Positions 20,246 to 63,698 of a DNA stretch of 64,000 nucleotides are shown here, one piece after another. The notes under the pieces are model-generated. The model was not told where the DNA came from and made no database searches. It saw only the letters and a list, made by a program, of their open reading frames with translations. The DNA is from Glycera tridactyla (Eukaryota). The stretch's first letter is position 1. Every line of letters starts with the position of its first letter. The stretch is from positions 35,154,001 to 35,218,000 of the forward strand of contig OZ286462.1 of NCBI GenBank assembly GCA_965644265.1. Direction: 5' to 3'. The position numbers were made by a program, and so were the translations under genes.

Positions 20246-20451
20246 TCAACACCATTCTGGGTAGTGTTCTTCCAGAATGGTTCGAATGTGTTGAATATTC
20301 TCCTCACACTCCCAAGTCTCCTCACCGGTACTCCACAATATCTTGTAGTGCCAGACATTTTTAATCTTCCTCCTCAACAGAAGTCGCTCGAAATGATGAG
20401 ATGAGTCAGGAGATTCCCCCTTTGACATTGGCAGCAGGATATCCATAGCAC
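20246..20451 (-). CDS. Chromodomain-encoding candidate terminal exon
   Basis: tttttgtag phase-1 acceptor, then AMDILLPMSKGESPDSSHHFERLLLRRKIKNVWHYKILWSTGEETWECEENIQHIRTILEEHYPEWC*; fits chromo consensus E-x-I/L...Y-x-I/V-x-W...TWE-x-EEN-I/L. Confidence 0.65.
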
Positions 20452-21254
20452 CTACAAAAACCACAAATACACGGTGAACTATCATTTCCCTGACTCATCG
20501 GAATACAATGAAACCTGCAATGAGATACCACCTCTGAAAAAAGACCATTTTCCAGAGCAGCATGCTTATTGCCTACATCAATATATGTCTGACGAGAGAC
20601 CAACTCTCATGAGAATCTGTTTTTGGTGACATTCAGAAAGGTCTTTCATTGCGCATTTTGCTGGACAAGACATAGGTTTTGGAAACGAAATGACTAAATT
20701 AGATCTCAAATTTTCCAAGATTGGAAATGCTCTCAAAGGGGAACTAGAGAGATTGTTTGAGCATCATTGAAAATATGATTATTGTTAAGATGTACTTGCA
20801 TCTTGATTAGTGTGTGTAGGAGTAGGAGTGTGTGTGTGTGTGTGTGTGTGTGTTTGTGTGTGTGTGTACATGTGGCTTCAAATGTGTGCTACAAGTCATG
20901 ATGAATCATAATGCCCATAATTTGTTTATGAATGGGTATTATTGTATGTATGTAGCCACGTGAATTGAAGAGAGACAAAAGTGATTAACAAAGTGTTAGA
21001 TTGACTATCGGATCGTCTGAAGAAATGATTGGACAATCAGACAAGTGACACCGACCGAGACAATGTACTCCACTCACTTTTAGGTTCCTCCTTTCTCAAC
21101 CGCTTGGTCTTGTTCATTCCTAAACAAACATTAGTAACAGGTCATATTAATGTTGACACATCGAAAAGACAAAATTAAAAATGCACCAAAAGTGAACAAG
21201 AATGTTTGCAAATATCATATCTGAATATACATAAATCAATGTAACATATATGAG

Positions 21255-29925: not shown

Positions 29926-30148
29926 CTGAAATCACCTGCCCTAACAACAAATCAGCAAGCCTGTGCTTGAAGGGCAACCCTTAGCATAGAGCCCTGGAAA
30001 CTGCAATCACAGAATTCAAACTTTTGATGCCAATCTGTGAGGGTGATGAGGGCAGTATTTTTGGTGAAATATGATTCACCTTCACTCGAATAATACATTT
30101 CGATCCACATTATGATCATCAGGATAAATTATTGTGAATTCGACTCAC

Positions 30149-30313
30149 CATGGAATTTTATATCCGTCTGGTTTTCAAGGATTGCCCTCCTCTGCAATGT
30201 GTTGTAGGATGAAGGGCACTTCACTGAGATTCCTAGAGGCATCCCAGTTGCTGCTACCTTCCCTTGCAGAAAGGCGATATATGAGCACCGATGATGTGTG
30301 CCTGTTGCTTTTC
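30149..30313 (-). CDS. Gene 2 exon, GTF2I-like repeat core
   Basis: KATGTHHRCSYIAFLQGKVAATGMPLGISVKCPSSYNTLQRRAILENQTDIKFH; ttag / G|GTGAGT. Confidence 0.78.
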
Positions 30314-33300
30314 CTAACAAATATATAAATACATTACCAATACTTGATTAAGTTTTGTGTTTACCATTCATGATATTGCAACAGTTATTCTGTTTTGAGA
30401 AGTGACTTCTCTAAATCAACAGGACTGGGATGAAACACATTAGTCATGGAACGAAATGTTTCTAGAAACACTCTTTGAATAATGGATAACGAAACGAAAC
30501 ACCATTTGTCCTGCCTTAAGGAATCTGGCGCTGCGATCCTCCTCTGCCGGGCGCGCCCTTGACTTTGCACTATGGTCACTGCTACTATCGAATATTGATG
30601 CGCCCGCCCAAAGTTCATCAAATCACTCTCATTCTTGCATCATAATAATGGCCTATCGTGTTATATTTTGCAGAATAAACGTCTAATAGAGACACTTTGC
30701 TCAATTCATCAGTGCGGCTTTAGGCGGAAAACACCCTCATTTTGATAATTTATGTCAAATACGGGCTATTTTTTCATCGCGTCATGACCGCATCCCATTA
30801 CCAAATTCCCCACAACCTTGGTCTGGCCTACGATTTTTTCCTCTATATCATGTTTGAGCATGATGCCATGATGGACAGTGTTTTGAAATCCTATTAGATT
30901 TGGTGGGCTCACTTATTACTTACCTCAATGCATAATATTTCTCCACATGGGCAGCATTGACATGTCTTCAACATTAGGAAATGATTCTGAACTGATGGAA
31001 ATGAACTTTGCAAATCCACTATTTCACTTTATCATTTATCATTCTTGATAGGGCTCCGAGTTCTGTCATTGTCTTGTGCACAATATCAAAGAACAGCAGT
31101 AATAACAGTTGTCTTCTGTGCATATGATATTGCCATAGGAGAGAAGAACTGCATCATCAAGATCCTAAAAAAGTCAAACCTAACTAAGACTGTCTTTAGT
31201 GGCATAAAAAACTGGTCATTGTAGACAGATGGTCTTGGTAGTCAGGTGAACAAACCTCTTCCTGAAACAAATATTACCACTGTGCGGATATTCAGTAGGT
31301 CGCTTCAGGAAGCTGTTAACTCCCAGTGATTATGAGATGAAGCCACACCAAATCAAGGATGTTTGTCAATGAAATCTCTCCCAGCCATCTGCTGCCAGCA
31401 ATGATGGCAGCACTGCATCATGAGTGTTACATGTAAAATGCTATGATTGAACCTATGAAACTATGATTATTAATCCTAAACTGTGACCGCCAGTATCTCT
31501 GTGTATGTTGATATCAACTGATAATGATAGTACTCACTGTAAAGATGGTTGTAAAGGTTCCTGATCTGCTCGTACTCCTGCTTTGCGACACCATCCGCCA
31601 TAGTCGAATCAGCTCTCCTTTCAACTGAAATACATTGGATACCTCAATGAATATCTTCAAGCATGTTCATGTTCCCTAACTTGAAAAACTCTAGTTGAAG
31701 CTTGATTGACCAAGTGAGATTTCTCGTCCAATGTAACCATTGACTGAACAGTGGTCAGTGACAACAATGAGAATGGCTATCACTAGTTCTAAGCAGAATA
31801 CATGTATTTGTGATATTTCTACATCTGGATAGGCAATTCTGTATCAAGAAGTATTCAGACACTGTATTGATCAGCATATCTCATTCAAATGTTCATGCAC
31901 ACTCCTGAACCTACAGCTGCATTCTTGAGTTGGTGCCTGGTGAAGGTGGCAACCTCATACCATTTAGTCAAAACATGTGATCAAATCCATTGTAACTGCC
32001 TGATCCATTGATTTTTGTACATTGAAGTGGGTCATGTTGATAAAAATATATCTGTACTTTCGTGACTGGCTACTGACTCAATGCAAGTTACCTGTGTCTT
32101 GGCCATGATATTACAAGGGACATTCAAGAGTTCACAAATCCGTTTGCTTTGTTTTGGATGGTAGTCGAGCACCAATATCTTTTCAATATCCGTCTCTGGG
32201 TATGCAAATTTAAGATATAAACATTGATTTGGGATTGTTTTGATCTGCTGATATATGGTAAATGATTGGTGAGTTCCCAGTTGAACACTGAATGTACGTA
32301 TTCCAAATTGTTTTACCATTTCACCACTTTCACCAGCTTACTTTGTAGCTCTAGTGTGGAACCACCTCTTTTGAACAGCCGAGATCACTTTGATCACTTC
32401 TGACTGGTGATCACACACTTCAAACAAGGAGAATAATTAATTCTGTGTAATACTCAATATTTGTGTTCATTATGTTCTGTCATATTCATCATGTCTACTT
32501 CCATTCATGCAGAATGCGATGAGAAGAAATCATTTTTGAAGGTGGTGTAGATTTTTTGTGCAAAGCCAAGACAAGTGCTTCTTTTCGGCTAGTAAGTCAG
32601 TAATGTAGAAAGACTGATTTATACATACTACCAGTTGCATTCAGGAAGTCCTTCTTGATTTCAAGTCTATCCACAAACGCCAAACCCTTTCCAGCTCCAT
32701 GAGTGAAGAGCTCCTCATTTCGCCGTATGATAGCCATCCACCCAACATCAGCCACATCAAGTTCCTCGGCTTCTTCAATCTAGTAGCAATACATTAAACA
32801 GAAAATTTATCTCACTTCAAAATATGTTTCACTTCAACATCAATATTGACTAAAGAAAAGTACAAGTTCACATCCTTGGTAGAGTTTGATTCACACACCT
32901 CAAGAGCTGCAAAGAACCTGCTAGAAGACCACCTCCATACAGAGACCATCTGCCTGCAAATACCACAGACCCCAAAACATGGCCATCGCACTATTTTATG
33001 CCACAACCTACCTCTCATGAGACCACACAAACTGCAGTTTCTCCATTGAAAGGTTTTGCTGTAAATTTATGAAGCTAGATGGGGCTAGAGATTCATCACA
33101 GGCCTATGGGTAGATTCCACTTAAAAAGACAATTCACCAACACGAAAATGTTAAACTGATTGACTGATTGTTTGACTGATTGATTGATTGATGTGTGATT
33201 TTTTTATCAAGAATTAGACTCACACGGAATTACAAGTACTATATCGTCCCATGTGAGTACAAAATACAAAACTTACACAAAGCCTGAGCACAAGATGATG

Positions 33301-36219: not shown

Positions 36220-36886
36220 CAAAGAGAGAAAGCGAGTGAGTGAGCAGAGCTGCATCCAGGATTTCAAATGAGAGAGAGTCATACCAAACTGCGTGGAACA
36301 AATGCGCGAATATTCCAGCATGTATCAGCGACGTGAAAGGTGGTCTCTCGAGCAGGTTTGACTGCATATATACTCTGTGCTAGTCAGTGTGAAAAAAACT
36401 AATTTGAATTTCCCGCCACTATTCGAGAATATGTGGTTCGCCATCGCCACCGCTAGGGGACACTATGCCCGCCTCTCTCAGTCACTGCAGAATGACTTAA
36501 GGAGGGATAGTCATATGAGATGAAAAACTTGGCAACCAAAAAAGGGGCTGGCGACCAAATTGAAAATCAATTTGGCACTGAAAAAAAATTGCCTGGCGAC
36601 CCAAAGTTTTTTTCAGGAGCCAGCAGGCTGCTAAATATTTTTCCCAACGTAGAGTCCTGTAATGTCTAGATTGAGTGGAAATCCCAAAGTGGAAATAGTA
36701 CCGTCTCCGACGGAAAAACACACCTTTATTCTGTTTGCAGGTAAGCCTGTCTCAGCCTCACACTGGTTTACCAGTTGTTTGGTTACAACAGTCCCATAAT
36801 TGGTCATCCCCTGCTGTTTGAACTTTCTCAAGGTTCCAATGAAAGGAGTGTAATCGAATGCCTTCCCTGTCCTTCGTCCGCCAAAG
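30149..36886 (-). CDS. Spliced multidomain nuclear protein: homeodomain-like + HMG-box-like + GTF2I-repeat-like (6 core exons; start and end unresolved)
   Basis: Exons 36724-36886, 35158-35287, 33857-34044, 32632-32779, 31538-31624, 30149-30313; GT-AG, phase-compatible, 881 nt open. ...ETGLPANRIK|RWIDNQKDR (homeodomain helix 3-like); RGLDAFRSE...INEDWLNLSPEEKEVY (HMG-like); QIRNLYNHLYRKATG...SYIAF..GKVAATGMPLGISVKCPSSY..LQRRAILENQTDIKF (GTF2I-repeat-like). Confidence 0.8.
31538..31624 (-). CDS. Gene 2 exon, start of GTF2I-like repeat
   Basis: ERRADSTMADGVAKQEYEQIRNLYNHLY; tttcag / A|GTGAGT. Confidence 0.78.
32632..32779 (-). CDS. Gene 2 exon
   Basis: IEEAEELDVADVGWMAIIRRNEELFTHGAGKGLAFVDRLEIKKDFLNAT; phase 0-1. 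Confidence 0.75.
33857..34044 (-). CDS. Gene 2 exon, HMG-box-like
   Basis: VGAASKVDRLKKINEDWLNLSPEEKEVYRVTAAANWVLKPNEMTEDERIVRMKQICCKMADL; ttcag / TTA|GTGAGT. Confidence 0.8.
35158..35287 (-). CDS. Gene 2 exon, homeodomain-like helix 3 plus start of HMG-like box; absent from ORF track
   Basis: RWIDNQKDRTRAERSRQIHVRRRQQRGLDAFRSEAMKKVMAEK; tttaag / G|GTAAGA. Confidence 0.8.
35745..35917 (+). mobile_element. SINE-like 3' portion with (AACC)n tail
   Basis: cccatgcccattgcatgggc..atatagccaagatggtgctgacgtgacgttaacc + (aacc)n; inverted homologue at about 9120-9280. Confidence 0.6.
36520..36660 (-). mobile_element. Short hAT-like MITE remnant (relative at about 49146-49260)
   Basis: Shared gattttcaatttggtcgcca core; CAGG(G/A)CTC-type terminus. 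Confidence 0.45.
36724..36886 (-). CDS. Gene 2 exon, homeodomain-like helices 1-2
   Basis: FGGRRTGKAFDYTPFIGTLRKFKQQGMTNYGTVVTKQLVNQCEAETGLPANRIK; tacag / AAG|GTGTGT. Confidence 0.75.
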
Positions 36887-36939
36887 CTGTAATAAATCAT
36901 TCAGGAAAATCAACACACTCGTGATGAAATATTTGCGGA

Positions 36940-38067: not shown

Positions 38068-38069
<2 letters not shown>

Positions 38070-38132
<63 letters not shown>

Positions 38133-38332: not shown

Positions 38333-38335
<3 letters not shown>

Positions 38336-47390: not shown

Positions 47391-47837
47391 TCATAAACCA
47401 ATATCTGCCAGGTCTGCCAAATCAGATGGTGAAAGAGACTCCAATTCAAACTCATCTTCCAGATACAACTCCTCCTGTTCAGCTTCATCTTGCAGCAGTT
47501 GTTGAAGCCCACAAGTATCATAAGAAACCTCTGGAAGATGAGATGAATCGGACAATTCAGGGATCAATGCAGAAAACAGATTTTTTGCACGATCTCTCAA
47601 CTGACACAGTCCAACACATTTTTTTTTTAGCAATGCTCTAGCACCAGTACATAACTCATCAGCAGTCTCTGCATTTTTGAGGGAAGCAATTCTCTCATCC
47701 AAGCTGGTTATTAAGCTCATCATCTCCGACCTTGTGGCTTGCATCTCCTCAAGACTCCTGGCTTTGCGGTTGTTGAGGTCAACCAATTCCCTCTTGATGT
47801 TCTTTGGGATCTCGGGCGAGGAAGTTGATGGGTTAGT
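47391..47837 (-). CDS. KDZ transposase terminal exon (coiled-coil-like region, acidic tail, stop)
   Basis: TNPSTSSPEIPKNIKRELVDLNNRKARSLEEMQATRSEM...EDEFELESLSPSDLADLADIGL*; ttccag acceptor. Confidence 0.85.
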   Translation of the reverse strand, partial: TNPSTSSPEIPKNIKRELVDLNNRKARSLEEMQATRSEMMSLITSLDERIASLKNAETADELCTGARALLKKKCVGLCQLRDRAKNLFSALIPELSDSSHLPEVSYDTCGLQQLLQDEAEQEELYLEDEFELESLSPSDLADLADIGL

Positions 47838-50800: not shown

Positions 50801-53800
50801 ACCAGAAAATATATTCAAGGAGGCATACATCTTTCTGAACACATATCTACTCGAAAAAATATAACCATAACTCATCACATGAATTGATTTGATTGCTGCT
50901 GTCAATATTGTTTCAGCTACTATATCCTTCACCATTATACCAGGTAATGGCCAACAAAAAGTTACATGGGGTAAAATGACTTAAACTATATGTATCATTG
51001 TCTGGAATGTCGGAACTGGATGTAAATGCCATTGTAGGTTGAAAGCACATCACATGGGCAGCATTGACATGTCTTCAACATTAGGAAATGATTCTGAACT
51101 GATGGAAATGAATTTTGCAAATCCACTATTTCACTTTATCGTTTATCATTCTTGATAGGGCCCCGAGTTCTGTCATTGTCTTGTGTTCATTTAGAGCACT
51201 GGTAAATGTACGTTGTAGTAGATGCCCATCAGAGATCATCTAATTAAGAAGTCAAAATTAATTAGGGAAGAAAATGGTTGCTTGAGAGGGTTGGTCATTT
51301 GTCCAGAAGCCAGTGCTCATAGCCCTTCAATTTGGCCCCCGCTTGTCATGATGCAATCAGGTCAGCAAATAGCAAAGTAATTTTCACATCATGTTGAAAT
51401 CCGATTAGATTTGGTGGGCTCACTCATTACTTACCTCAATGCATAATATTTCTTCAGATCTGCAACATACTTCTGTTTCCACACAGGCCCCGTACCTGGA
51501 AAGAAGTTGAAATATCTGAGTATCTAATCAAATGGAATTGTTTCAGAAGACAGCACATCTTTGGAAATGTTTGAATTGCAGCCAAACCTGAATATAACAC
51601 AGTCCAGCCCAAAGCAGTCATTGCAAGGAAGTGGTCATCTTATGTGGGGTGGATATGTGTGAAATAACTAGTGATAAACAATGGTCAGGAGCTACAGTGG
51701 AAATGTTGATAATGATGATCTTGATGAATCTTATTCTCATTATAGAAGAAAATCATGCAGGCAAGGTTCACTGAAAGTGACAAATGTAACTCAAACAGCT
51801 CTTCATGTGTGTATTTCCATGCAGGCCTATTCAAGGAAAATCACTTTTATTGGCAGGAAAGGCAATCATTTCACCAGCATCGTGGCACAGATCCAATTTC
51901 GTTTTCAGACAAAAATACATGTTCTGATATGACTGGTTGCTGTATTGTTTTGGTCACCATCTTGTCATCTGCATGGCATGCTCACTCATGCTCGCTCATC
52001 CAGGATATGGCTACCACATATCAATGGACATCATGTTATGACGTTAACCCAGGAGATGCCAACTGTAACACTGACATTGAGGTTCAAAAGTGGGACCTGG
52101 CCATGAAATACGTGCCATATACTCGCTGTGCCAAACCTTCCTCTAAACCACACTCACATATGCATGAGCATGTATGCATGTGGGTGAGTTGGTGTGTTGC
52201 AGAGGGAAGGAAATAGGGAGTGAGCATGTATTCCTGGAAAGAGAATAAGTGCCGAAGAAGTCGACAACAGTCATAACAAAGGACTCCATAATACCCTGAG
52301 ACCTGTGACCAGAAATGAATGACAAAATAACAGACTAACATTCTGCTGCGCATTTAAATCAAAATTGTCACAAGATATCAAATGTCAAGCGCATATCTGT
52401 GAAGTCAAAGGTCAGAAGGTCAAAAAGACATGCATAGACTCACCTACTGGTACCCCTCATGGCTTGTCCACTTGTCCCCAAAGTGATAGTGTATCATCTA
52501 CACAGTGTTCACAGCCATACCAAAATGTTGTTTACAGACACACACACAGACAGATGTATTGAATCTGAATTCCCCCACCCCACACACACCTCCAGTTAAA
52601 TGACACAGTATCATATATTGATGAGGAGATTTGTCTGGATCTCATGAGCCTGTGGAAACCTTGCAGTATATCATCTACTACGATAGGTATACTGGTTCCA
52701 ATCTCTGAAATGGGGTGGGTGAAATTCAATCAATGTACCTGCCATAATACAGGGGGCAAACAGGCCTATACACATACCTTGTTGGATTCCTCCAGATGGC
52801 CTGTTACCCATTGACATCATCTCTTCCTGGTTCCACTCACTGATCTCCTGCTCACTGACAGCCACTGGAAGGAAGAAAATGAGATCAAATGCATGATAGA
52901 AATCACAGAACATCACCATATGCATGTTGGGTTAGTTGGTTGTTTGGAACAAAATGAGAAATACATGCCACTGAGGCTTTAGCCCCAAATTTGATCAATA
53001 ATATGGTGAATACAGTTGAGTCTTCTCAGGAAACACTTAGAGTATGAGGGCCACCTAACCAGTACCTACAAAGACCACCCAAAATAATACCAAAACAGCA
53101 TTTCATACATTACTTCACATTTAGTTTGACTGTCCGGTCTTGAATTGGAAAAGTTTAATGAAACCTGGTATTCCGGATTGATTCAGCAACAGGTAACAAC
53201 AGACATATTTGCTGAGTATGTAGTATTTGTGCTCAATGATGATAGTTGCGGCGTCATAAAACTGGATCTTCCAAAGTTGGTAATCCAGCACTAATGTGGT
53301 TTTAAATTGTGCTCCACTGCCCATTTATAATTCATCAACTGGATATGCAAATCATTGGAAACACATGAATGCAGTTATCCATCTACTGAACACCATATCA
53401 ATTACCTGTTAGGCTGTTCATTAGTATCAGTTGGTTCTCTGTCGCCTGTGCATACAGCTTCTCGGCAGCCCGGTGTCGCTCCACCAAATTCAAATCTACC
53501 AGAAATCAATCAAAGCAATCACAGTTGTCTAGATACTATCAAAACATGAAAAAAGTTACATATGTCAGGTGACCTACACTAATAAGTTTGTGATCCAGTA
53601 AAGATAGCTGCAGTATGCTTCCCCGTCAAATTTGAATCAATGAGTAAGAATTAACCACTATGATCACCATAGATTGATCTAATAGCAAGGTATTTACTTT
53701 CATATATGGAATAGCTGGTGCCCACTTGCGCACTCAGCCAATTACACAGGTGATCTGAGTGGGGGCCATGTGTGATGTTGGAAGTTTGTATGGCAGCAGG

Positions 53801-56800
53801 CATACCATTTCATAAATTAAATGCTACTGCCACTGCACAGAATAGCCTTACACAAGCCAACAATGCACATGAAGGCCCTTTTTCTATATTGTAAGTAGAC
53901 CTCATTCAAAGAGCAGGAATCTTGTATTGGGTTGGTATGAGTGGAGAGTAAAGTTCGTTGTTGCACAGTGAAACTCAAAATTCACCCGCCTGTCACTTCA
54001 TGAAGGAAGGGTGAGAAGTGATGATTGGTGAAATTTCAACCTACCAAGTGAAGCTATCTTTTTCTCAGCAAAATGCCTCAATGCTGCAGAGAGCAACTGG
54101 TTCCTGTGCGTTGCTGTCTGCTCTTCAGTAATGAGGTTGAATCGCCTTATGAAAGACCAAAGGCGTTCCATTTGCTCGCCGTCAATCATTCCGAAGCCTT
54201 CCTTTCTTCTTGGACTATACTTCAGCTGTAAAATAAAGGCAAACACTTCAGTAATATTCAAATTGGTCTTCTGTTATGTTTAGAAAAATTTCAGATCAAG
54301 CTATTTCATCATATATGCATACCTGCCATGTCGTTCAGTAGTGATCCACCATGGTTTCAGTAGTTTTGGTTCAGTAGTGATTTTCTCATCATTTTCAGTA
54401 GTGATATTCACAACTCAGAATCCATGCACATGAATGTATTTACATGTTCAGATAAAAAAATGGATTCTTATGCAAATCAGTGTTGAAATATTGACACTAT
54501 AACTTGTGAAACTATCAGGTTTCATTCAACATTTCATGAATATTTATCAATCCTGTCCTAGCAACATTTTTTTTTGGGATCATGCTTCATTTCTGAATCA
54601 GTAGTTTGTCACGGGCATCAGTAGTTCAGTTTGACCTCATTTCAGTATTCAGTAGTAGTTGACAGGTATGTATATGGATATCTTGGATAAGTCCAAGTAA
54701 ACAGAGAAAAACTCTAAGAGGGACTCTTCCCCATTTCGCTAATAGGAATGACAGAAGAATACTAGAATATATCTACTCTGCTGTCTATATTTTCTTTCAT
54801 TTTATGCTATGAAGGCAGTAGTTTCCAATGTGATCTTCTCTGAATGTAGAAAAGTAAATCATGACTGCACATCAGGTGCCCAATATCAACTGATCAGATG
54901 GGGAGTTGTCACGCTGACCTTCACATGGGCCAGCACTACTAACCCATACAAATAGCACTAAGAAGTGAAAAAGGAATGAAAAAGCTATGTATGCATTAGA
55001 TGCATTTTATTTCTTTTCTCCCACTTATTGGTCCATGGGCAATGCATTGTGAATAAAAAAATTGGAATCAAAATGCTTTAAATTACATCTGTGACAAGTT
55101 TGGTGTAGCCAGGTCAGTCAGCATCTTCAAGAAAATCCTCTCTGGAAATGCAATTTTGTCCTATGAATCAGTGAGGCTCGTTGGAAGACTCCATTTATGA
55201 AAGGCAGACATTAGGGAATGCTATGAGATGCATCTTTGTCAAGGGACAAGGATGCTGCCCTGGGTACTGAAAAACCCACCAGAAATGACAGGTTTTAGTC
55301 AATTGAAAAATTGATGTGTTGCCGTCAAATCAAATTGGGATGCTGAATGGACGATGGCGGGATACATTAGAAATGGGACATATTTAAGACATCAACATCA
55401 TTGATGTGTGACCTCAACACTGCTACAGGAATGGGAGTGGATGCTGCAGCAACCGCAATACCTCTCTCAACTTTATGGAGGTGAGGTGAAACTGACCAGC
55501 CTGTTTCTTAATGTTTTACCATGCCAGGCTTTGATGAAGGGCAAGTAGAACCCTTTCATCAGTGTATGAATTCTTTTTGTTTGGGTTTCAGAAACATAAC
55601 TTATCCATTTGAAAGCATTGAAAGCATTGGAATCGTCCAGCTCCAGTTGGGGGGGGGGGGGTATTTGCAATATTCCTCAGCATGTAATGCTCTGGATATA
55701 TCTAGTATCTGATTTGTCTCCGGACTAGGAGGCAAATATTCACATTTCACATCTGTCTGAATGTGGTGATTAAGAAAACAAGATAATGTCTATCAAAACT
55801 CAGCTTTTAGCATTTCATATTTGATGTGATTTCAAATTGCATTTTGGGAATTACCTACCTGGCATGATGCTTGATGTCCGTAGCAGTGAAATACTGGTAT
55901 GGCCAGGCTAATCTTTTCAAGCAAGTCTTTGTCTCCTGATTTCTGAAACATATTAGCATTTTGGGAATTACCTACCTGGCATGATGCTTGATGTCCATAG
56001 CAGTGAAATACTGGTATGGCCAGGCTAATCTTTTCAAACAAGTCTTTGTCTCCTGATTTCTGAAATAAATTAGCAACATTGTCTTGACAGACAAACCGAA
56101 TCAAACGGATATGCTCATTAGATGATGATGCATATCTCAGTTTGCAGCACATTGCCATCCCTTGGTTGTAAGGTCATGAAACTAAATGACCTGTAATGAA
56201 CCATCCTCTGTATTTACCAGAATATTTGATCATAAAAATTGCATATTCTAGTATTCAAACCATACTTCTGTTAAATATGTACAAGTGGACTCATATGATT
56301 CAGATGGAATCAGCTGATGTGCTTATTATAACTATTTTCCGAATTTTGTATGATCATTTTTCTGTCAGACCGTATATTTCATTGTTTTTATGTGTATATT
56401 AAACAGTTCAAAATTGGATTGAATTGGCATAGTGAGTGACTTGGTGAGTGTAATGAGATATACTCACTTCCAGATGGGAGGTAAGCACGCAACCAATGTC
56501 ATATAACACATTCAAATCAATGGACTCGTCGAATGACTCGATCAGGTTTTTGATGAGAAAGACAGGGTATGCAAGCCTGAAATCACAACCAGATGGAACT
56601 ATACAAGATGAACTGGAACTGTACTCTAGAAGATGACTAATGACCCCCCCCCCCCTCCCCCTCCCGCACTCACCCCAGCCAATTTGAACTTATGAGCACC
56701 ACAATTTAGCATTCAAGATGAGAACATCAGGTCTGGGTACTGTAGCCATAGTGTACACACAGGTAGGAAGTCACATAATATTTTCCATCATTCGGGTATG

Positions 56801-59800
56801 ACATCTTTGAGAATACTAAGATTCAGCTATCCTCAGCCTTTCCATCTACATTGAAAATAATTATTCTATAATGAAATGGGCCCCCTCAAGGACCAAAATT
56901 ACCTTGATTACTGCATTTTATTGACAATAAAATCACTCTGGAAATATCTGATTATATCCATGGGTCGAGACAGCTTCACACCTGGACAAAATAGCAGTCA
57001 CAACCACAATTTGCTTCTCTTTGGGCTCTAATTAACAGCCAAGGAAAGCCAACACACAAAATGGAACAGTTGGAGTCTGCTATCTTTGAACTGACTCAAA
57101 CTCTGCGAAGTCATCGACACCTGCAACAACCTCTGTGACATCATCAATTGTTTAGATAGCCTAGCAATACTTTCACAATAATTTTATGAATAGTGTCTAT
57201 AGTGAATTGACTTTTGACATTTCACACATCCAACTCACCTCTCTCCATGTATGAGATTCATGAATAGCAGAGGAATCTCGTGCTTACAGCTGGATCCCAG
57301 CACACCAGTATACTGTAATTTCGCTGCACGATTTTTGCTTCGCAGAATATCACCAGCTTGGAATCGATTGCATTCCTGGAGGGACAGTGGCATAGTTAGC
57401 TCACTCAGTTCAATCATGTACAATACAAAGATACATTCTGGAAAAGCTGCTCCATGGAGTGATATGTCCTGCTCGCCTGACTGAAGTCATGATTGGAATC
57501 TTGATCGATGTTGATGATGAGAATGATGGCAACAACAGAATATGATATGCATTTGTATTGCCCATGTTATAGCATTAAGGAATATATTTCTTCAGGTTCA
57601 TAGGCAGAAATCTGATCAAATCTCACCTGTAACACCTCCCCCACAAGCAGACTCACAACACCTACACAATTATGCCTGCCTTCATAATGCATGTGTGTGA
57701 GTGGATGTGTTTGTGTGTGTATGTACATGCACACTTGTGTGCATAGTGGGGGAGGGGGTTGAGGCTCTGTTCTATTATACATTGGTTGAGGGGGGAAGTG
57801 CTAGACATTATCAACAACCCTATTACATTACAGAAATAGAGACAACAGAAACATTGTTAATTTCGAAGAACCTTCCATATTGGTTCTATCATCTCAAACA
57901 ATTCCAAACTCACAAATGAAAAAGGTCTTCTTTTCCCTCGAAATAACCCAATTACATATAATAGAATATGGAATATCATATGCCTACGTTATTTTCCAAA
58001 TACAGATACATATGTACCGTATATACTCGCGTATAAGCCCATTTCTTTACGACAAAAAATCGGGGCAAAAGATGGGGGCGGCTTATACATGAGTATACAT
58101 TTCGTCAGAGCCAAATATCAATGTAAACGAAGATCCATGAGCTGGTGAAGGTTTCTCTAGCAGCCGCCGCCATCTTTGATTTTGAAAGAACCACCGAAAA
58201 AACGTGCAAATATCATCAAATTTGACAAGGTTCCCCAACAAATAAGATTCTATCCATGCAAGAGATTTGTCAGCAATATTGTTCTATCTATCATGCCATA
58301 AGCTGTTAGTCAATCCATTGCATGGTTCTCGAGAAATCAATCTTTTTATAACATGGAATCCATTACGAGTACAGATGCCATAGCCAAACACTGACCAGTT
58401 GAAGACTGATTCTGAAAACAATATTTTTCACAACTCACAATCTCTCTTGAAATGCCCGAAATACTGCCAGATGGCAATGAATAGTCCCATATGTACAAAT
58501 ATCTAATCTAATGCCACAAATGATGATCGTTTGGTAGGATATTCCAACAAATTCACCATAAACGTGATGAAAACAAGGCCTGTATAACCATCCGATTGTG
58601 TTAGGCCATTTTGATCATCATCAGATCACATGATCAAATGACCAAATATGGCAAAGAACTAGAATTTTTTTGTTGCATAATTTATAAGTATATATGACGT
58701 AATTCCAGGGTTTCCCTTTATATTCAAAATGCCAGCATCGTCACATGATACAACAATGACACTCAAATCGCTATGGAAGAAGCCAGCCTTTTCTTTTCAT
58801 CGCCAAATACATGCTCATGTGGCTTTGAAACATGTTTTCCTTGACGGAGATTGCCCCAACATGGATTGTACCCTTGAATCATTGAAGTGTGGAGGCGAGA
58901 ATAAACCAACAATATCCATGATAAGCTGCAAAATGGCTTCTCTACACAGCTGTCTTTGATATATTGTGACACTAGTCACCGTCTTCAACAAAATCGGGGG
59001 GAGGCTTACATTCAAATAATTCCCAACTAAATCCCGACTTTTGGAGGCAAAATCGTACCCGGGATTATATGCGAGTATATACGATATACCAAATTTCAAG
59101 AATGATGGAGCAATATTGATGGAGTGAGGCTTCAAAGAAAAAACCTAACCAAAATCTTAACCAAGACTTAAACCAATGTTAACGATGCAAACGCTGACAC
59201 CGACACCGACGCCGACACCTATGCCGACGGAATGGTAACACCTATGTCCCGCCAATGCTGAAGCAGGCGGGGCAATAAATCCAATCAGGCAGTGAAACCT
59301 GAGGTGAAACCCCTGAAGATATCTACTTCTAAAATGTAGTTTGAATCTTTATGGAATAATAGGATATAACTAGTATAAAAGATTGATCTAAATATGTGAC
59401 CAGACAGCCCAGAATGTCAGCAAAAAGCCATATCTAAAAATATTGGACAATGTCAGATATGAATGCAGACCTAAGAAAACAGTTTCTTGTCAGAGGTGGT
59501 CTCCAGTCAGGAGGTCTATTGAAGCAGGTTCCACTTTTCAGTTTATTCATCAGGAGGTTGATGACAAACAAGTGGCAAATGAGATTTTCCTTCTTCACTA
59601 TTAAGTGAAAGACACTTGACTATGGAGATCATATTAAGTGAAATGAAAAAATGACTGAATCCATACTCACTCCAGCTCCTGCTTTTTTATGGTCATTGTA
59701 ACCAGCAACAAATCTGTTGACAGCTTCTTGCTGAAGGAAGTAAGCTGAAGCCTTGTCAACATCTGCACTCTTTCTTTTCAGCACCAGACCGAAATTTCCA

Positions 59801-62800
59801 TCGATTGACAATGTTACACGCCCATTTTTCTACAATAGATCAGACTTTTTTGAAAGAAGGATTCTGTATTTCAATCAGAAATCAAACAAATAAATCCCAA
59901 GTACCGTATTCTCCCTAATTAGTGCCCCGGGGCGCTTGATAATTGAGAAAGGGGGGCGCTTATTTGTTCGAGATCTGTCAAAATCCCCGATGGGCGATAA
60001 TCGGGTATTTTGGCGAACATAACTCCGATGGCCGGCAAAATATCAACGAAACATTCGATAAACATATTACACGAGTTCTATTAGCTTCACAGAGGAGAAA
60101 AACCGATAGAACTACAAGGATATGACGTAAATTTGCCGAATAAGCATGTGCAAAGAGCAGCATATGCATAACGAATCTCACTTTGACAAGTCAATCCCGT
60201 ATTGTCAGACGTAGTTTGCCGCGATCATAACCCACGATATATCAAACTTACAGGAAAAACGATCGTGCGAATGAATTCCTGAGTATAAAATCGTGTGGTA
60301 TCCATACATAAATCCCTCAAATCCGTCGAATTTTCGCCGAAAACAGTGGAAATATCGAGCGGCAATGACTGGCATCTTTAACCACGTGCGCGCCGCCATG
60401 TTGGATCTGGCCTTCGAGCTCGCTCAGAAAGTGCGGGAAATTCAAACGTCCGAGACTATCAAAGGCCAGTCTGCAACTTCTCCCTCCCACGGGAGGGGGG
60501 GGGGGCTTATGAGGGTGGGGGCGCTAATTAGGGAGAATACGGTATTTGTAATTGCTAATGAACAGGTACAGTGAAACCTGTCAAAAGTGACCACCCTACT
60601 AGACACAAGAAAATGGTCACTCGAAAGAGGTGGTCACTTGTCCAAGGTTCCACTGACTTGTCCTAGATGCAAATACACATAACACAAGATATTTCCAATA
60701 CCGCCCACTAATCTTTTGCAGAATGAACATATACTTCACAAATTACATGCAAATGGCACAATATGGGGGGAATTCCCCTCTCCGCATAATTTATGTGGGT
60801 ATCTATTTTCAGATTACACAGATTAGACAGATGGGCTAAGATATTATGCAATTGAAGATCGTCCAGAACCAAGCTGTTTCTGAAGCAGGTGGAGATGGAT
60901 ATCATATTCAATACCATGATACAAATCCCGTCTTTGAAGGAATTGACCAATCCCTGTTGCATTTACAACTGCTATTCGACTTCAACTTTCTGATAGCTGA
61001 GGTGAAGAATTAAAATGCGGGATGGGAAGGGTCAGAAATACCGAAATGGGGGAGGGGAGAGGGAAGGGTCACAGTTTTTCTCCAGACAGGGCATTTCCCC
61101 ACTTTTTATAATGGGGTAGCTCTGAGTGAATTATTCATAGGGATGACCAGAACTTCCAAGTATCTAATTGCATCAATTCATATTCAACAGAGGAGAATTA
61201 TGCCAACGATGTTTTCATTGAGCGAGTAACAAAGATGTCAGCTATACATGAGTCAGGTCAAACAAGAACAGCAAGATCAAACAGGTTACACTGGTGTCAG
61301 ACTCACCCTTAATAGGGCATTTTGGACTGTTTTTCGACACAAATGCCAAAATATCTGCATAGTTACGCCCATGCTGCTTTCTGATTATACATCCTATCCC
61401 CCCTGCATTCAAATTGTTTTCCCTGATCATATTGCCCACATGCCAACTTTTGCACTTTTGTAGAGCCCCACCACTGCTTTCATGTTGGACTGTAAATGAT
61501 CTTTCATCAATGAGGAGCAATGAACATACATGATATTTTGAGCTTATACAGGCTTTCATACCAACCAGCACCATAATTGCAAGGTTCAAGACTCAAACCC
61601 CAATATTAATTTAATTCCATAAAGATAAGTATTGTTGATTCACCTTAGGACAAGCTGGACAAATGACCTTTTTGCCTTCACGGAATTGATCCAGTGCTGA
61701 TAAGAATTCTCTGAATTGGGCCAGACATTCTCCCTTCATGAAACGCTGCAGTTTTGAAATCTGAAAGTACAGAGTGAGAACAATTACCAGCAGTGTGACA
61801 CATGTTCTTCCACACAACAATGATGTTTACGACAAATCTATGAGGTTCATGATGAACTCATCTCATGAATTATGACCTCTCAAAATTTTAAGAGCAGCTG
61901 GCTCCTGACCTTTGAAATATGGTAGCCAGAGGGTAAATTTGGTAGCCATTGGCCACTCAGGGGTAGCAACATAGAGCCCTGGTTAGAAACAATGCACAGC
62001 CAAATTTGTATACGACAATCAGAGATGGATTTGGAAAACTGGTGGGTTTTTTTCACAGAGAGGTGACCTATTGTATCAGATACTATCGTGGTAATCACTC
62101 TGGGTGATTGTTATTGAAGGATGAGGAGGTGGCCACTTTCAAGCTAGACTGTAATAGTGTTTTATACTAAGAATTGAAGTTCAGGAATTTTGGATTTTTG
62201 AAGGTTGGTAAGACTGGTGAAACCTTAATTATCAAATCTGTAAGGAGCCATCACATGTTTTGAGCAATCTTAAGCTTTTTGAGGCAGTTCCCAGTGATTT
62301 TCCCCTTATTCACAACCGTGGTTGTCTCCAGCAGACGGTGGTTGATTTCCTCTAGTATGTTAGATTGAAGAAACCTTGATCTCTGTGGCATTTGAATGGA
62401 TGATGAGAATAATCAGACTGAGGGGTGGGGGGGGGGCAAATTGCTGTCAAGTATTACCTGAGTAGTATCAAGCCCCTTTAGATACTTCAGCGCCATGACA
62501 AATCCATATGCAGGAACCTGGCACTCCAATGTTAGTGCATGTAGCCAGCTAAGCAGGTCTATCGATACAGCCATACCTGGTTGATCAGGAGATCCTGCCC
62601 AGTAGCCATGGCGAACCAATGTCTTGGCCCATGGCTCACACTTACACAGTTGGACATTGGCTTCAACGAATCTGCCTGTAGAGTAAAATGGGAAAAGTGA
62701 ATGAATTATAAGGACAACATGAATAATTGAAGTGGCGAATGTAGTAATGTCATTGATGATAATTCTAATATGAAAACTTCACATATTTTCAATACACTCA

Positions 62801-63698
62801 GGCTAGTGTGATGATATGTTTTCACTGAATTCATGACTGGGCTCTCGCTATGGAGAATAAATTCCCACTATGTTATACTTCACTTTTCTATCAGATTATT
62901 AGTCAAGGAGGTCGGGAGGCCACCCTCCAGTGCGAGAATGGTAGCACATACTTTTGCCAAGATAGAGAGGATGAACTCGATTGTGTGAGGTTTGTTTTGT
63001 TGGAGTTTGATGGCATGTGACACCCAAAAAGATTATGTATGCTGTGTTACTGTTCAAAGAAAGCTAGATACTCTGTCCCCCATATGCATCACATACACAA
63101 ACCCTGAAGTCGAGATGGGAAACTGGGAGCTTGTCACAAGGAAGTAGCTCAAAGTTGAGACATGCTTTAGTTTATTTGACATGAATATGATGACCCTGAA
63201 AAGGTGATGAAATAGTGTTGAAATAAGTTGAAATTTGCCACTGAGCAAAGATAAAATTCAAGATTGGCATCGAAATGATGTCATGGGCCAATGAATTGTG
63301 CCAAACTGTCAACAAATATTCAAGGTCTCACTAGACAGTTGTGCTTTTCCTGAGTGTGCACTGAACTCAACAACCTTCCCTAAGCAACCATGACCTCATG
63401 CTTAGAACAGGTTTGACTGTCGGTGCATATTGAGAACCACAATCATCCACAATCACTTTCAACTTCAGCCACTCTTCAATTTTTTCTCCTTGAGTATGAT
63501 CATCATCTCCTTTTTGAGAGTGATGAATTAAAATATTTCATAGTGGATTGACTGTGATAAGTTGTAACTCATGGATATATCATTTTCTAGGTATTTACCT
63601 GATTTTGTCACAAGAGTCAGATGCCTTGACTGCACTGTCTCACAGTCATGAGTTGCCAGCAAGGTAACTTGAATTGTATAATCGATGTACATATCATC
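47391..63698 (-). CDS. Spliced KDZ (Kyakuja-Dileera-Zisupton) family transposase with CxC-type Cys cluster; at least 15 exons, 5'-incomplete
   Basis: Exons 63599-63698, 62458-62675, 61644-61760, 59671-59829, 57239-57375, 56468-56576, 55976-56059, 54045-54225, 53406-53495, 52778-52864, 51435-51495, 50563-50625, 49396-49571, 48442-48623, 47391-47837. All have AG/GT boundaries and compatible phases; 2211 nt = 736 aa + stop, with no internal stop. Motifs: CKCE..LVRHGYWAGSP, CPACPK, SIDGNFGL, TGVLGSSCKHEIP..GER, LYDIGC, AIPVFHCYGHQASCQ, GFGMIDGEQMERLWS. Confidence 0.9.
48442..48623 (-). CDS. KDZ transposase exon
   Basis: GQAIAGRISRQITKVGQKVKILLALYNEQHFTQYSRLPNTLSTDDIQCTTADVFVLLSSE; GAG|GTAAGT. 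Confidence 0.82.
49396..49571 (-). CDS. KDZ transposase exon
   Basis: KLRETENRHGFSRWGRNTLDYLSELEVFEMNSKVHFLCKLLALVEEKSFLIHLRSKYS; T|GTAAGT. Confidence 0.8.
50563..50625 (-). CDS. KDZ transposase small exon
   Basis: DTISDHEEGSEDTEKFQILT; ttgcag / CT|GTAAGT; phase 2-2. Confidence 0.7.
51435..51495 (-). CDS. KDZ transposase small exon
   Basis: TGPVWKQKYVADLKKYYAL; ttccag / AG|GTAAGT; phase 1-2. Confidence 0.75.
52778..52864 (-). CDS. KDZ transposase exon
   Basis: AVSEQEISEWNQEEMMSMGNRPSGGIQQ; ttccag / G|GTATGT; phase 1-1. Confidence 0.75.
53406..53495 (-). CDS. KDZ transposase exon (helical C-terminal region)
   Basis: LNLVERHRAAEKLYAQATENQLILMNSLT; tag / G|GTAATT; phase 1-1. Confidence 0.75.
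54045..54225 (-). CDS. KDZ transposase exon with catalytic Glu (DGEQMERLWS)
   Basis: LKYSPRRKEGFGMIDGEQMERLWSFIRRFNLITEEQTATHRNQLLSAALRHFAEKKIASL; G|GTAGGT. Confidence 0.9.
55859..55942 (-). CDS. Tandem duplicate of the FHxYGH exon (copy 2)
   Basis: KSGDKDLLEKISLAIPVFHCYGHQASCQ; 117-bp repeat unit that includes both splice sites. Confidence 0.75.
55976..56059 (-). CDS. KDZ transposase exon, FHxYGHxxxCQ motif (copy 1)
   Basis: KSGDKDLFEKISLAIPVFHCYGHQASCQ; tttcag / CAG|GTAGGT. Confidence 0.88.
56468..56576 (-). CDS. KDZ transposase exon with second catalytic Asp (YDIGC); absent from ORF track
   Basis: LAYPVFLIKNLIESFDESIDLNVLYDIGCVLTSHLE; tttcag / GAA|GTGAGT. Confidence 0.9.
57239..57375 (-). 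CDS. KDZ transposase exon (CxxFxA...TGVxGxxCxH...GER)
   Basis: ECNRFQAGDILRSKNRAAKLQYTGVLGSSCKHEIPLLFMNLIHGE; AG|GTGAGT phase 2. Confidence 0.9.
58017..59084. mobile_element. Non-autonomous pogo/Tigger-like element, about 1.07 kb, inside a KDZ intron
   Basis: ta-CCGTATATACTCGCGTATAAG ... ATTATATGCGAGTATATACGA-ta. Confidence 0.8.
59671..59829 (-). CDS. KDZ transposase exon with first catalytic Asp (SIDGNFGL)
   Basis: KNGRVTLSIDGNFGLVLKRKSADVDKASAYFLQQEAVNRFVAGY; gtag / GGA|GTGAGT. Confidence 0.9.
59904..60542. mobile_element. MITE (Tc1/mariner-pogo type), 639 bp, inside a KDZ intron
   Basis: TIR CCGTATTCTCCCTAATTAG(T/C)GCCCC at both ends, flanked by TA. Confidence 0.9.
61644..61760 (-). CDS. 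KDZ transposase exon ending in CPACPK
   Basis: ISKLQRFMKGECLAQFREFLSALDQFREGKKVICPACPK; tttcag / AAG|GTGAAT; phase 0-0. Confidence 0.85.
62458..62675 (-). CDS. KDZ transposase exon, CxC1/CxC2-like Cys cluster region
   Basis: RFVEANVQLCKCEPWAKTLVRHGYWAGSPDQPGMAVSIDLLSWLHALTLECQVPAYGFVMALKYL; cag acceptor, CAG|GTAATA donor. Confidence 0.85.
63599..63698 (-). CDS. KDZ transposase exon (first visible): DDMYIDYTIQVTLLATHDCETVQSRHLTLVTKS-G
   Basis: tttcag acceptor; G|GTAAAT phase-1 donor that joins the next exon as TKSGRF. Confidence 0.7.

What the first reader, a model, noticed from the sequence alone, without database searches (positions are those of the whole stretch)
20246..63698. Candidate two-gene animal KDZ system: intact spliced transposase followed by a homeodomain/HMG/GTF2I-repeat(/chromodomain) partner gene
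Seen: two co-oriented minus-strand, intron-rich genes 10.5 kb apart; the KDZ gene and the six core exons of gene 2 are open across every junction. Known: fungal KDZ elements are linked to TET/JBP and other chromatin-related genes, and vertebrate HMGXB3 pairs an HMG box with a KDZ-derived region. Inference: this could be a giant (>40 kb) KDZ element whose second gene supplies DNA-binding and chromatin-reading functions such as end recognition or target selection, or a domesticated pair. I do not recall this domain combination being described next to a KDZ transposase.
Basis: partly seen in the sequence, partly recalled or inferred. Interest (0 to 1): 0.9.

Follow-up and report, generated by a model that had tools for sequence, protein, structure and literature searches.

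The report
KDZ transposase gene beside DNA-binding gene
Two real, intron-rich genes lie head-to-tail here, a KDZ-type transposase gene and a gene for an HMG/GTF2I-repeat DNA-binding protein, but I found no evidence that they form one mobile element or a working pair, and the test that would settle it could not be run with these tools.

Summary
The sequence observation largely holds.

**KDZ gene.** Seven minus-strand exons (62675-54045) join through canonical AG/GT sites into an open 334-aa core. It has a CxC1 cysteine cluster and the whole KDZ catalytic domain in order. The 5' end is unsettled. The seven 3' exons rest only on an unreliable ab initio chain.

**Gene 2.** It starts 10.49 kb downstream. 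Six exons (36900-30149) join into an open 298-aa protein.
- The GTF2I repeat reaches Pfam's cut-off.
- The HMG box is probable.
- The chromodomain-like exon, 9.7 kb further on, is phase-compatible but weak.
- The homeodomain was not detected by any profile.

**Assembly gaps.** All three lie in an intron or in the spacer, none in an exon.

**Linkage.** This could not be tested. Eleven exon-level searches for relatives were blank, apart from one unrelated multi-HMG protein. The spliced proteins have no reference, so they could not be submitted. No terminal inverted repeats were found. The spacer is filled with satellites.

**Context.** Multi-exon animal KDZ genes and multi-gene fungal KDZ elements are already published. 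The most likely reading is two neighbouring genes. A two-gene element remains possible at about 12%. Earlier scan notes cover only this same stretch, not other DNA.

The parts
63599..63692 (-). Candidate first coding exon of the KDZ gene, starting at the ATG at 63692. Unverified.
   Evidence: Ab initio chain only, score 2.9. No Pfam hit. The true 5' exons may lie beyond the window end.
62458..62675 (-). KDZ exon a: CxC1 cysteine cluster
   Evidence: Pfam CxC1 2e-10, 41.2 bits against a cut-off of 26.9, profile positions 39-97. AG/GT sites.
61644..61760 (-). KDZ exon b, ending in the motif ICPACPK
   Evidence: In frame with exons a and c through canonical sites. Recovered by the exon chaining.
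59671..59829 (-). KDZ exon c: first acidic motif, SIDGNF
   Evidence: Pfam KDZ profile positions 3-47. Canonical sites.
57239..57375 (-). KDZ exon d
   Evidence: Pfam KDZ profile positions 51-98, 4.8e-5. Canonical sites.
56468..56576 (-). KDZ exon e: second acidic motif, LYDIGC
   Evidence: Pfam KDZ profile positions 101-137. Canonical sites.
55859..56059 (-). KDZ exon f in two tandem copies, f1 56059-55976 and f2 55942-55859, carrying the motif HCYGHQASCQ. Each copy has its own splice sites.
   Evidence: Tandem Repeats Finder: 117-bp unit, 2.1 copies, 95% matches. Self-BLAST: 96.7% identity. Pfam KDZ 6.6e-11 with two stretches. Either copy keeps the frame open.
54045..54225 (-). KDZ exon g: third acidic motif, DGEQMERLW
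   Evidence: Pfam KDZ profile positions 164-215, 4.8e-9, 36.7 bits. Canonical sites.
47391..53495 (-). Candidate 3' part of the KDZ gene: seven ab initio exons (53495-53406, 52864-52778, 51495-51435, 50625-50563, 49571-49396, 48623-48442, 47837-47391 with the stop)
   Evidence: Best-scoring chain from exon g to the stop at 47391. No Pfam family in any of them and no homologue found. The same method over-predicts elsewhere, so only the 148-aa terminal exon, inside a 202-codon open stretch, carries weight.
36901..47390 (.). Spacer between the two genes. It holds a 511-bp satellite x6 (40114-42967), a 146-bp satellite (45181-46398), microsatellites, and two assembly gaps (39009-39141, 39241-39402).
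   Evidence: No gene-like open frame and no Pfam hit.
36724..36900 (-). Gene 2 exon 1: ATG and the first two helices of a homeodomain-like helix-turn-helix. Unconfirmed.
   Evidence: Open and in frame. In-frame stop immediately upstream. AlphaFold single-sequence model has helices at residues 18-29 and 35-51, pLDDT 71. No Pfam or PDB homeodomain hit.
35158..35287 (-). Gene 2 exon 2: putative recognition helix (RIKRWIDNQKDR) and the start of the HMG-like box
   Evidence: Canonical sites, phase 1 at the 3' end. No Pfam hit on its own.
33857..34044 (-). Gene 2 exon 3: remainder of the HMG-like box
   Evidence: PDB TFAM HMG box 8.9e-5. Multi-HMG protein P0001 2.2e-8. Pfam HMG_box 0.0085, below its cut-off.
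32632..32779 (-). Gene 2 exon 4: linker of unknown fold
   Evidence: Canonical sites, in frame. No family hit.
31538..31624 (-). Gene 2 exon 5: probably the N-terminal helix of the GTF2I repeat
   Evidence: Canonical sites, phase 1 in and out. No family hit on its own. The role is inferred from the position of the exon-6 match in the GTF2I profile.
30129..30313 (-). Gene 2 exon 6: GTF2I-like repeat. It has a GTGAGT donor after 30149, or alternatively reads on to a TAA at 30131-30129.
   Evidence: Pfam GTF2I 27.7 bits for the exact exon and 30.1 bits for the open stretch, cut-off 27. PDB TFII-I, GTF2IRD1 and GTF2IRD2 repeats are the five best hits.
20246..20451 (-). Chromodomain-like exon with a stop codon. 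Possible last exon of gene 2.
   Evidence: The acceptor phase fits the exon-6 donor, giving 366 aa in total. All 16 PDB hits are chromodomains, best CDYL2 0.003. Pfam Chromo 11.3 bits against 25.1. One of three aromatic-cage positions is kept in the CDYL2 alignment. No integrase or other domain lies upstream of it.

Best explanation
These are two separate neighbouring genes.

**Gene 1** is a multi-exon KDZ (Kyakuja-Dileera-Zisupton) transposase gene. Its product has an N-terminal CxC1 zinc-chelating cysteine cluster, followed by the RNase-H-like KDZ catalytic domain with the motifs DGNF, YDIGC and DGEQMERLW. If complete, it would act as a cut-and-paste DDE-type transposase. This copy, with kilobase introns full of repeats, is most likely an old resident copy, immobile or host-retained.

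**Gene 2** encodes a small nuclear DNA-binding protein of about 300-366 aa. It has a divergent helix-turn-helix that is homeodomain-like but unconfirmed, then an HMG-like box, a linker and one TFII-I-type GTF2I repeat. It may also have a degenerate chromodomain-like tail.

**Shown:** the exon structures, the open frames, and the KDZ, CxC1 and GTF2I domain calls.

**Inferred:** catalytic competence, DNA binding, and the independence of the two genes.
For: - KDZ core is open over seven canonical exons with the ordered Pfam matches described above.
- Gene 2 is open over six canonical exons, with GTF2I at the Pfam cut-off and HMG-like matches.
- No usable splice donor exists in the last KDZ exon, so a fused transcript is unlikely.
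- The 10.5-kb spacer is satellite DNA with assembly gaps.
- No inverted terminal repeats and no shared boundary sequence were found.
- Multi-exon KDZ/Zisupton genes of 18-31 exons are the published norm in animals. They are described there as gene families encoding a transposase, with no partner gene mentioned (PMC9297572).
- The best named ESM Atlas neighbour of the HMG exon is a 283-aa cnidarian cluster of 166 members carrying GTF2I and Homeodomain. This hints that gene 2 belongs to a family of its own with the same size and layout (score 0.75, a lead only).
- Base rate: every gene has a neighbour, and co-orientation is a coin toss.
Against: - Independence was not demonstrated. No homologue of either gene could be retrieved, so adjacency elsewhere is untested.
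- Both genes are equally orphan-like in very large databases. That is what genes of one lineage-specific element would look like.
- Gene 2's mix of DNA- and chromatin-binding modules is the kind of accessory protein transposons use.
- Fungal KDZ elements are known to carry extra genes (PMC11343200, PMC12730594).
- No canonical poly(A) signal lies within 1.5 kb of the KDZ stop.
Confidence: 0.55

Rival explanations
1. A giant (>44 kb) two-gene KDZ transposon, active or fossil. The KDZ protein cuts and pastes. The HTH/HMG/GTF2I(/chromo) protein binds the element ends or picks targets, like the Myb-like partner of PIF/Harbinger elements.
For: - The genes are co-oriented and adjacent.
- Both are orphans in the databases.
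- Gene 2 is made of DNA- and chromatin-binding modules.
- KDZ elements with extra genes are documented in fungi: 8-bp TSD, 236-bp TIR, up to 10.9 kb (PMC11343200). TET/JBP cargo is also known (PMC12730594).
- Two-protein Harbinger/Nuwa elements are a precedent (PMC12730594).
Against: - No TIRs or shared termini were found in the window.
- The interior carries kilobases of satellite and nested repeats.
- No second copy is available.
- It would be about four times the size of the largest described KDZ element.
- Animal Zisupton families are described in PMC9297572 as transposase gene families, with no partner gene mentioned.
Confidence: 0.12
2. A domesticated pair. Both genes are host-retained derivatives of one former element and now work together, for example a catalytically active or inactive KDZ protein recruited by the DNA-binding partner.
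For: - Both coding regions are intact although their introns have accumulated repeats, which is compatible with purifying selection.
- Zisupton-derived host genes are reported in vertebrates (PMC3424704).
- F-box/CxC7 fusion genes are reported in fish (PMC12062965).
Against: - No orthologue, synteny or dN/dS evidence could be obtained.
- Intact exons with repeat-laden introns are equally expected for any expressed gene, or for a young copy in a repeat-rich genome.
- There is no sign of co-transcription.
Confidence: 0.08
3. Gene 2 belongs to a separate multicopy, possibly transposon-associated, family (homeobox plus GTF2I proteins expanded in some invertebrates). It landed or was duplicated next to an unrelated KDZ copy.
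For: - The Atlas cluster named under the best explanation has 166 members and the same length and domain mix as gene 2.
- The domain mosaic is unusual.
- The surroundings are repeat-rich.
Against: - The Atlas score is only a lead, and the other two exons gave no such hit.
- The exhaustive search with the HMG exon found no family member.
- No second copy lies in the window.
Confidence: 0.15
4. The adjacency is an assembly artefact. The two genes are joined only through the two gaps in the spacer.
For: Gaps at 39009-39141 and 39241-39402 sit in tandem or low-complexity sequence. The left flank cannot be matched to the right.
Against: The 99-bp island between the gaps is 79% identical to the sequence just after the second gap. 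This suggests one repeat array rather than a join of unrelated contigs.
Confidence: 0.05

Closest known systems
Animal Zisupton/KDZ multi-exon transposase genes (Pristionchus, fish, lancelet, sea star, mussels; PMC9297572)
   Same: It has the KDZ catalytic domain PF18758 and a CxC cysteine cluster. It has many exons: at least 7 shown here and about 15 modelled, against 18-31 published. It looks like an ordinary host gene.
   Different: The modelled protein here is about 735 aa, against 1000-1400 published. The N-terminus was not found. No SWIM domain was detected. The cluster is CxC1 rather than CxC4 or CxC7. Introns are much larger and repeat-filled. Copy number, TIRs and TSDs are unknown.
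Fungal KDZ elements with extra genes: Cryptococcus KDZ1-3 and KDZx1 (PMC11343200), and TET/JBP-carrying Kyakuja, Dileera and Zisupton (PMC12730594)
   Same: A KDZ transposase gene lies next to a further protein-coding gene.
   Different: Those elements are 6-11 kb, have shown mobility or defined ends (7-8-bp TSD, TIRs in some), and exist in several copies. Their extra genes are TET/JBP dioxygenases or domain-less ORFs, not HMG/GTF2I proteins. None of those defining features could be shown here.
PIF/Harbinger (Nuwa) two-protein transposons: transposase plus Myb/SANT DNA-binding partner (as summarised in PMC12730594)
   Different: It is a different transposase superfamily. The elements are compact, a few kb. 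The partner has a Myb/SANT domain. No interaction or co-mobility is shown here.
TFII-I family (GTF2I, GTF2IRD1, GTF2IRD2) I-repeat proteins
   Same: One GTF2I-like repeat reaches Pfam's cut-off. The best PDB matches are TFII-I-family repeats.
   Different: There is a single repeat instead of 2-6. No leucine zipper was found. It is combined with an HMG-like box and a helix-turn-helix, which the vertebrate proteins lack.
ESM Atlas cluster 'Homeobox domain-containing protein' (283 aa; GTF2I in 52% and Homeodomain in 18% of 166 members; mostly Cnidaria)
   Same: It has the same length class and the same pairing of a weakly detectable homeodomain with a GTF2I repeat. It is the best named neighbour of the HMG exon.
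   Different: The similarity score is only 0.75. No alignment or E-value is available. Its members could not be fetched, so kinship is untested.

Membership tests
KDZ (Kyakuja-Dileera-Zisupton) transposase | KDZ catalytic domain (Pfam PF18758) | tested here: met
   Profile positions 3-215 of 217 are covered in order by exons c-g. Exon f scores 42.8 bits and exon g 36.7 bits against a cut-off of 26.6.
KDZ (Kyakuja-Dileera-Zisupton) transposase | CxC-type zinc-chelating cysteine cluster N-terminal to the catalytic domain | tested here: met
   CxC1 at 41.2 bits against 26.9 on exon a, upstream of the catalytic exons. Only profile positions 39-97 were found; the first 38 were not located.
KDZ (Kyakuja-Dileera-Zisupton) transposase | Conserved acidic catalytic residues | tested here: met
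   DGNF, YDIGC and DGEQMERLW are present in the spliced core. Their assignment as the catalytic triad comes from general knowledge of the family, not from an alignment made here.
KDZ (Kyakuja-Dileera-Zisupton) transposase | Complete uninterrupted coding sequence | tested here: inconclusive
   The core is open. The N-terminus was not found inside the window. The 3' exons come only from an ab initio chain, and that method over-predicts.
Zisupton (canonical architecture) | SWIM zinc finger plus CxC4/CxC7 cluster (PMC11343200, PMC12062965) | tested here: not met
   No SWIM hit in any scanned open stretch of the gene. The best cluster is CxC1. Small exons may have been missed.
Mobile KDZ element | Terminal inverted repeats and 7-8-bp target-site duplications at defined ends | tested here: inconclusive
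   No candidate TIR was found by the repeat finder, self-BLAST or a sensitive search of 62.7-64.0 kb against the window. The upstream end would lie outside the window.
Mobile KDZ element | Several copies in the genome | not testable with these tools
No eukaryotic genome search is offered. There is no second copy in the window.
Two-gene transposon (transposase plus accessory DNA-binding gene) | Same gene pair, order and orientation in other copies or genomes, inside common ends | not testable with these tools
   All exon-level searches for relatives were blank. The spliced proteins have no reference and were not submitted.
GTF2I / TFII-I repeat proteins | GTF2I-like repeat (PF02946) | tested here: met
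   27.7 bits for the exact exon and 30.1 bits for the open stretch, cut-off 27. PDB TFII-I-family repeats are the five best hits.
GTF2I / TFII-I repeat proteins | Several I-repeats in tandem | tested here: not met
   Only one repeat. tblastn of the spliced protein against the window finds no further copy. The other exons give no hit.
HMG-box proteins | HMG box (PF00505 / PF09011) | tested here: inconclusive
   The box is split by an intron. The larger part scores 16.9-17.2 bits, below the cut-offs of 25.4 and 22.4. It matches TFAM box 2 at 8.9e-5 and a ten-box HMG protein at 2.2e-8.
Homeodomain proteins | Homeodomain (PF00046) | tested here: inconclusive
   No Pfam, PDB or Atlas signal on exon 1 or exon 2 alone. 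The domain would span the exon 1/2 junction, and the joined sequence could not be submitted. Support is limited to the motif RIKRWIDNQKDR and two predicted helices.
Chromodomain proteins | Chromo domain (PF00385) with an aromatic cage | tested here: inconclusive
   Pfam 11.3 bits against 25.1. All 16 PDB hits are chromodomains, best 0.003. In the CDYL2 alignment the first cage residue is His, the Trp is kept, and the third position is deleted. The single-sequence model was poor (pLDDT 62) and was not used.

The most novel reading that the evidence does not exclude
The two genes are one animal KDZ element, mobile or recently immobilised, or its domesticated remnant. The KDZ transposase would rely on a dedicated accessory protein that combines a helix-turn-helix, an HMG box, a TFII-I-type repeat and a chromodomain-like tail for end recognition or chromatin-guided target choice. 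That would be the first two-component KDZ system in animals and a transposon origin for an invertebrate GTF2I-repeat family.
Probability: 0.12. Interest if true: 0.75.

Novelty: new member of a known kind. Interest (0 to 1): 0.3.

Why it matters
If the pair were one element, it would extend the accessory-gene habit of fungal KDZ transposons to animals. It would also give a testable case of a transposase served by a separate chromatin- and DNA-binding partner, and hint at a mobile origin for invertebrate GTF2I-repeat proteins.

As it stands, the locus offers two things. One is a cleanly modelled animal KDZ catalytic core. The other is an uncharacterised small DNA-binding protein with an unusual domain mix. 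Both are useful for annotation but not surprising: multi-exon KDZ genes in animals and multi-gene KDZ elements in fungi are already published.

Tried and rejected
**Searches for relatives (all blank unless stated)**
- The search for homologous proteins with gene-2 exon 1, the last KDZ exon and the CxC exon. Its length filter excludes full-length relatives of single exons.
- The exhaustive representative search with the HMG exon returned only P0001, an unrelated ten-box HMG protein.
- Metagenome scans with the HMG exon and KDZ exon g, viral scans and a prokaryote-genome scan.
- ESM Atlas on the GTF2I exon and on exon 1 gave low-recognition noise: phage terminases and LAGLIDADG.

Any search, Pfam scan or fold with the spliced 298/366-aa gene-2 protein or the spliced KDZ protein. 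This is why the homeodomain and the adjacency test stay open.

**Other analyses that led nowhere**
- The AlphaFold model of the chromodomain-like exon came out all-helical with pLDDT 62. I judged it unreliable and ran no fold search. The exon-1 model is too small for a meaningful fold search.
- My ab initio exon chaining recovers the known KDZ exons. Downstream of gene 2 it strings a LINE RNase H fragment and tiny exons together. Its KDZ 3' and 5' models are therefore tentative.

**Ideas rejected**
- A KDZ-gene 2 fusion transcript: there is no usable donor in the last KDZ exon.
- The open stretch 32035-32337 as a gene-2 exon: no phase-compatible acceptor.
- The chromodomain-like exon as the tail of an LTR-retrotransposon integrase: no integrase or RT upstream of it.
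- The 135-bp 98% repeat shared by introns of both genes as an element boundary: both copies are intronic and in direct orientation.

**Also checked**
- No RNA genes.


Full report
**What the window is.** The window is 64 kb of about 40% G+C animal-type DNA, rich in micro- and minisatellites and interspersed repeats. It has no tRNA or Rfam RNA genes. Earlier notes of this scan on the same genome mention ZMYND8, MTHFD1, Meis and TCF genes and several large DNA transposons. The notes that touch this finding are all on this same stretch. The scan has not recorded this on other DNA.

**Assembly gaps.** I tested these first, as asked. None of the three gaps touches an exon.
- Gap 25931-26058 lies in the 9.7-kb interval between gene-2 exon 6 and the chromodomain-like exon. 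Its left and right flanks match an ungapped repeat copy at 26833-27382, colinearly and in the same order. The two sides therefore belong to one repeat unit.
- Gaps 39009-39141 and 39241-39402 lie in the intergenic spacer. The 99-bp island between them is 79% identical to the 104 bp after the second gap, so they sit in a tandem array with a period of about 261 bp. The left flank is microsatellite, and continuity there cannot be shown.
- The 10.5-kb spacing is therefore an estimate. The physical linkage of the two genes depends on the scaffold across those two gaps. I did not fill or look up any gap letters.

**The KDZ gene.** Pfam scans of minus-strand open stretches gave these results:
- CxC1 at 2e-10 on 62416-62778.
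- KDZ (PF18758) matches on five successive stretches, covering profile positions 3-47, 51-98, 101-137, 141-171 and 164-215.

I placed the splice sites by eye and checked them by script. The exons are a 62675-62458, b 61760-61644, c 59829-59671, d 57375-57239, e 56576-56468, f 56059-55976 and g 54225-54045. All have AG/GT borders and join into an open 334-aa sequence with DGNF, YDIGC, HCYGHQASCQ and DGEQMERLW.

Exon f, with both of its splice sites, is tandemly duplicated. The unit is 117 bp, the copies are 96.7% identical, and the second copy is at 55942-55859. The 33-nt spacer between them is open in frame, so any splicing choice keeps the reading frame.

Downstream, my exon-chaining script finds a chain of seven further exons. 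It ends in a 148-aa exon (47837-47391) inside a 202-codon open stretch. Three cautions apply:
- These exons have no family hit and no retrievable homologue.
- The script recovers exons b-f, but it was trained on them.
- Elsewhere the script visibly over-predicts.

Upstream of exon a, only a weak 31-codon ATG exon at 63692 is offered. The first 38 positions of the CxC1 profile were not found, and the window ends 1.3 kb upstream. So the catalytic core is intact, but "intact transposase" is not established. No SWIM domain was seen.

**Gene 2.** Six exons join into an open 298-aa protein. They are 36900-36724, 35287-35158, 34044-33857, 32779-32632, 31624-31538 and 30313-30149. All have canonical borders and compatible phases. 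The protein starts at an ATG that follows an in-frame stop. The domain evidence is:
- **GTF2I repeat.** Pfam gives 30.1 bits on the open stretch and 27.7 bits on the exact exon, cut-off 27. The five best PDB matches are TFII-I, GTF2IRD1 and GTF2IRD2 repeats.
- **HMG-like box.** It is split by an intron. Its larger part matches TFAM box 2 at 8.9e-5 and a ten-box HMG protein at 2.2e-8. Pfam gives 0.0085, below its cut-off.
- **Homeodomain.** It was not detected on either exon by Pfam, PDB or the Atlas. It rests on the motif RIKRWIDNQKDR spanning the exon 1/2 junction and on two predicted helices in exon 1. The joined sequence could not be submitted.
- **3' end.** Exon 6 can end at its GTGAGT donor, or read six more codons to a TAA at 30131-30129, giving 304 aa.
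- **Chromodomain-like exon 20451-20246.** It is phase-compatible, bringing the total to 366 aa, and it ends in a stop. All 16 PDB hits are chromodomains, best 0.003, with one of three aromatic-cage positions kept. Pfam gives only 11.3 bits. It lies 9.7 kb away, past a LINE fragment and a gap. No integrase lies upstream of it.

**Are the two genes linked?** This is the crux, and I could not test it.
- The tools take only contiguous references, and single exons are short.
- The word-indexed protein search also filters by length. Its three runs were blank.
- The one exhaustive search, with the HMG exon, found no family member and not even this protein itself. The genome's own proteins are therefore apparently not in the collection.
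- Metagenome, viral and prokaryote scans were blank.
- The only lead is an ESM Atlas neighbour of the HMG exon: a 283-aa cluster with GTF2I in 52% and Homeodomain in 18% of 166 members, mostly Cnidaria. The score is 0.75. It suggests that gene 2 belongs to a family with the same size and layout. Its members could not be fetched.

Within the window:
- There are no inverted terminal repeats and no second copy of either gene.
- The last KDZ exon has no usable donor for a fusion transcript.
- The spacer is filled by a 511-bp satellite (six copies, 40.1-43.0 kb) and a 146-bp satellite (45.2-46.4 kb). The 146-bp family also occurs at 16.5-20.0 and 55.1 kb.
- A 135-bp repeat, 97.8% identical, lies in an intron of each gene. 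It is an ordinary young interspersed repeat.

**Comparison with what is known.**
- Animal Zisupton/KDZ genes are described as multi-exonic (18-31 exons), encoding proteins up to about 1400 aa, and looking like host genes (PMC9297572). Intron richness therefore says nothing about domestication.
- Zisupton-derived host genes exist in vertebrates (PMC3424704). F-box/CxC7 fusions exist in fish (PMC12062965).
- Fungal KDZ elements carry extra genes. These are TET/JBP dioxygenases (PMC12730594) and, in experimentally mobile 6.4-10.9-kb Cryptococcus elements with 8-bp TSDs and 236-bp TIRs, ORFs without recognisable domains (PMC11343200).
- Harbinger/Nuwa elements pair a transposase with a Myb/SANT protein (PMC12730594).

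**Verdict.**

| Reading | Probability |
|---|---|
| Two independent neighbouring genes | about 0.55 |
| Gene 2 belongs to a separate multicopy family | about 0.15 |
| One two-gene KDZ element | about 0.12 |
| Domesticated pair | about 0.08 |
| Assembly artefact | about 0.05 |

The decisive step is genome-wide tBLASTn with the spliced proteins, followed by boundary analysis of paralogous loci.

Noticed in passing
window 55859-56059 (minus): The 84-nt KDZ exon carrying HCYGHQASCQ is tandemly duplicated together with its acceptor and donor. The unit is 117 bp and the copies are 96.7% identical, differing by one residue (F/L). This could mean mutually exclusive exon use, an in-frame 39-aa insertion, or an assembly artefact.
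   Followed up: partly
window 30944-31078 and 51051-51185: A 135-bp repeat, 97.8% identical and in direct orientation, sits in an intron of gene 2 and in an intron of the KDZ gene. It is probably a young MITE- or SINE-like element.
   Followed up: partly
window 40114-42967: A 511-bp satellite in six tandem copies (64-99% identity) lies in the spacer between the two genes.
   Followed up: partly
window 45181-46398, 16552-20036, 55072-55234: A satellite or repeat family of about 146 bp lies on both sides of gene 2 and inside a KDZ intron.
   Followed up: partly
window 27947-28693 (minus), with related copies 25765-27382 and 28816-29485: A LINE-type fragment with an RNase H domain (Pfam 1.1e-7) and an internal 202-bp tandem duplication. 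It lies inside the long interval between gene-2 exon 6 and the chromodomain-like exon.
   Followed up: partly
window 7800-10800: A 3-kb G-rich minisatellite built of 8/12-bp GGATGGAT-like units with GC skew up to +0.54. It reads as long proline/serine/histidine-rich open frames on the minus strand, which are not genes.
   Followed up: no
window 36724/35287 junction: The intron between gene-2 exons 1 and 2 falls just before the putative recognition helix (RIK|RWIDNQ). From memory, this is where many homeobox genes have a conserved intron, at homeodomain position 46/47. Not checked against any reference.
   Followed up: no
window 45891-47390 and 28629-30128 (minus strand, the 1.5 kb downstream of each stop): No AATAAA or ATTAAA lies within 1.5 kb downstream of the KDZ stop or of the exon-6 read-through stop of gene 2. 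The 3' ends of both transcripts are therefore undefined.
   Followed up: partly
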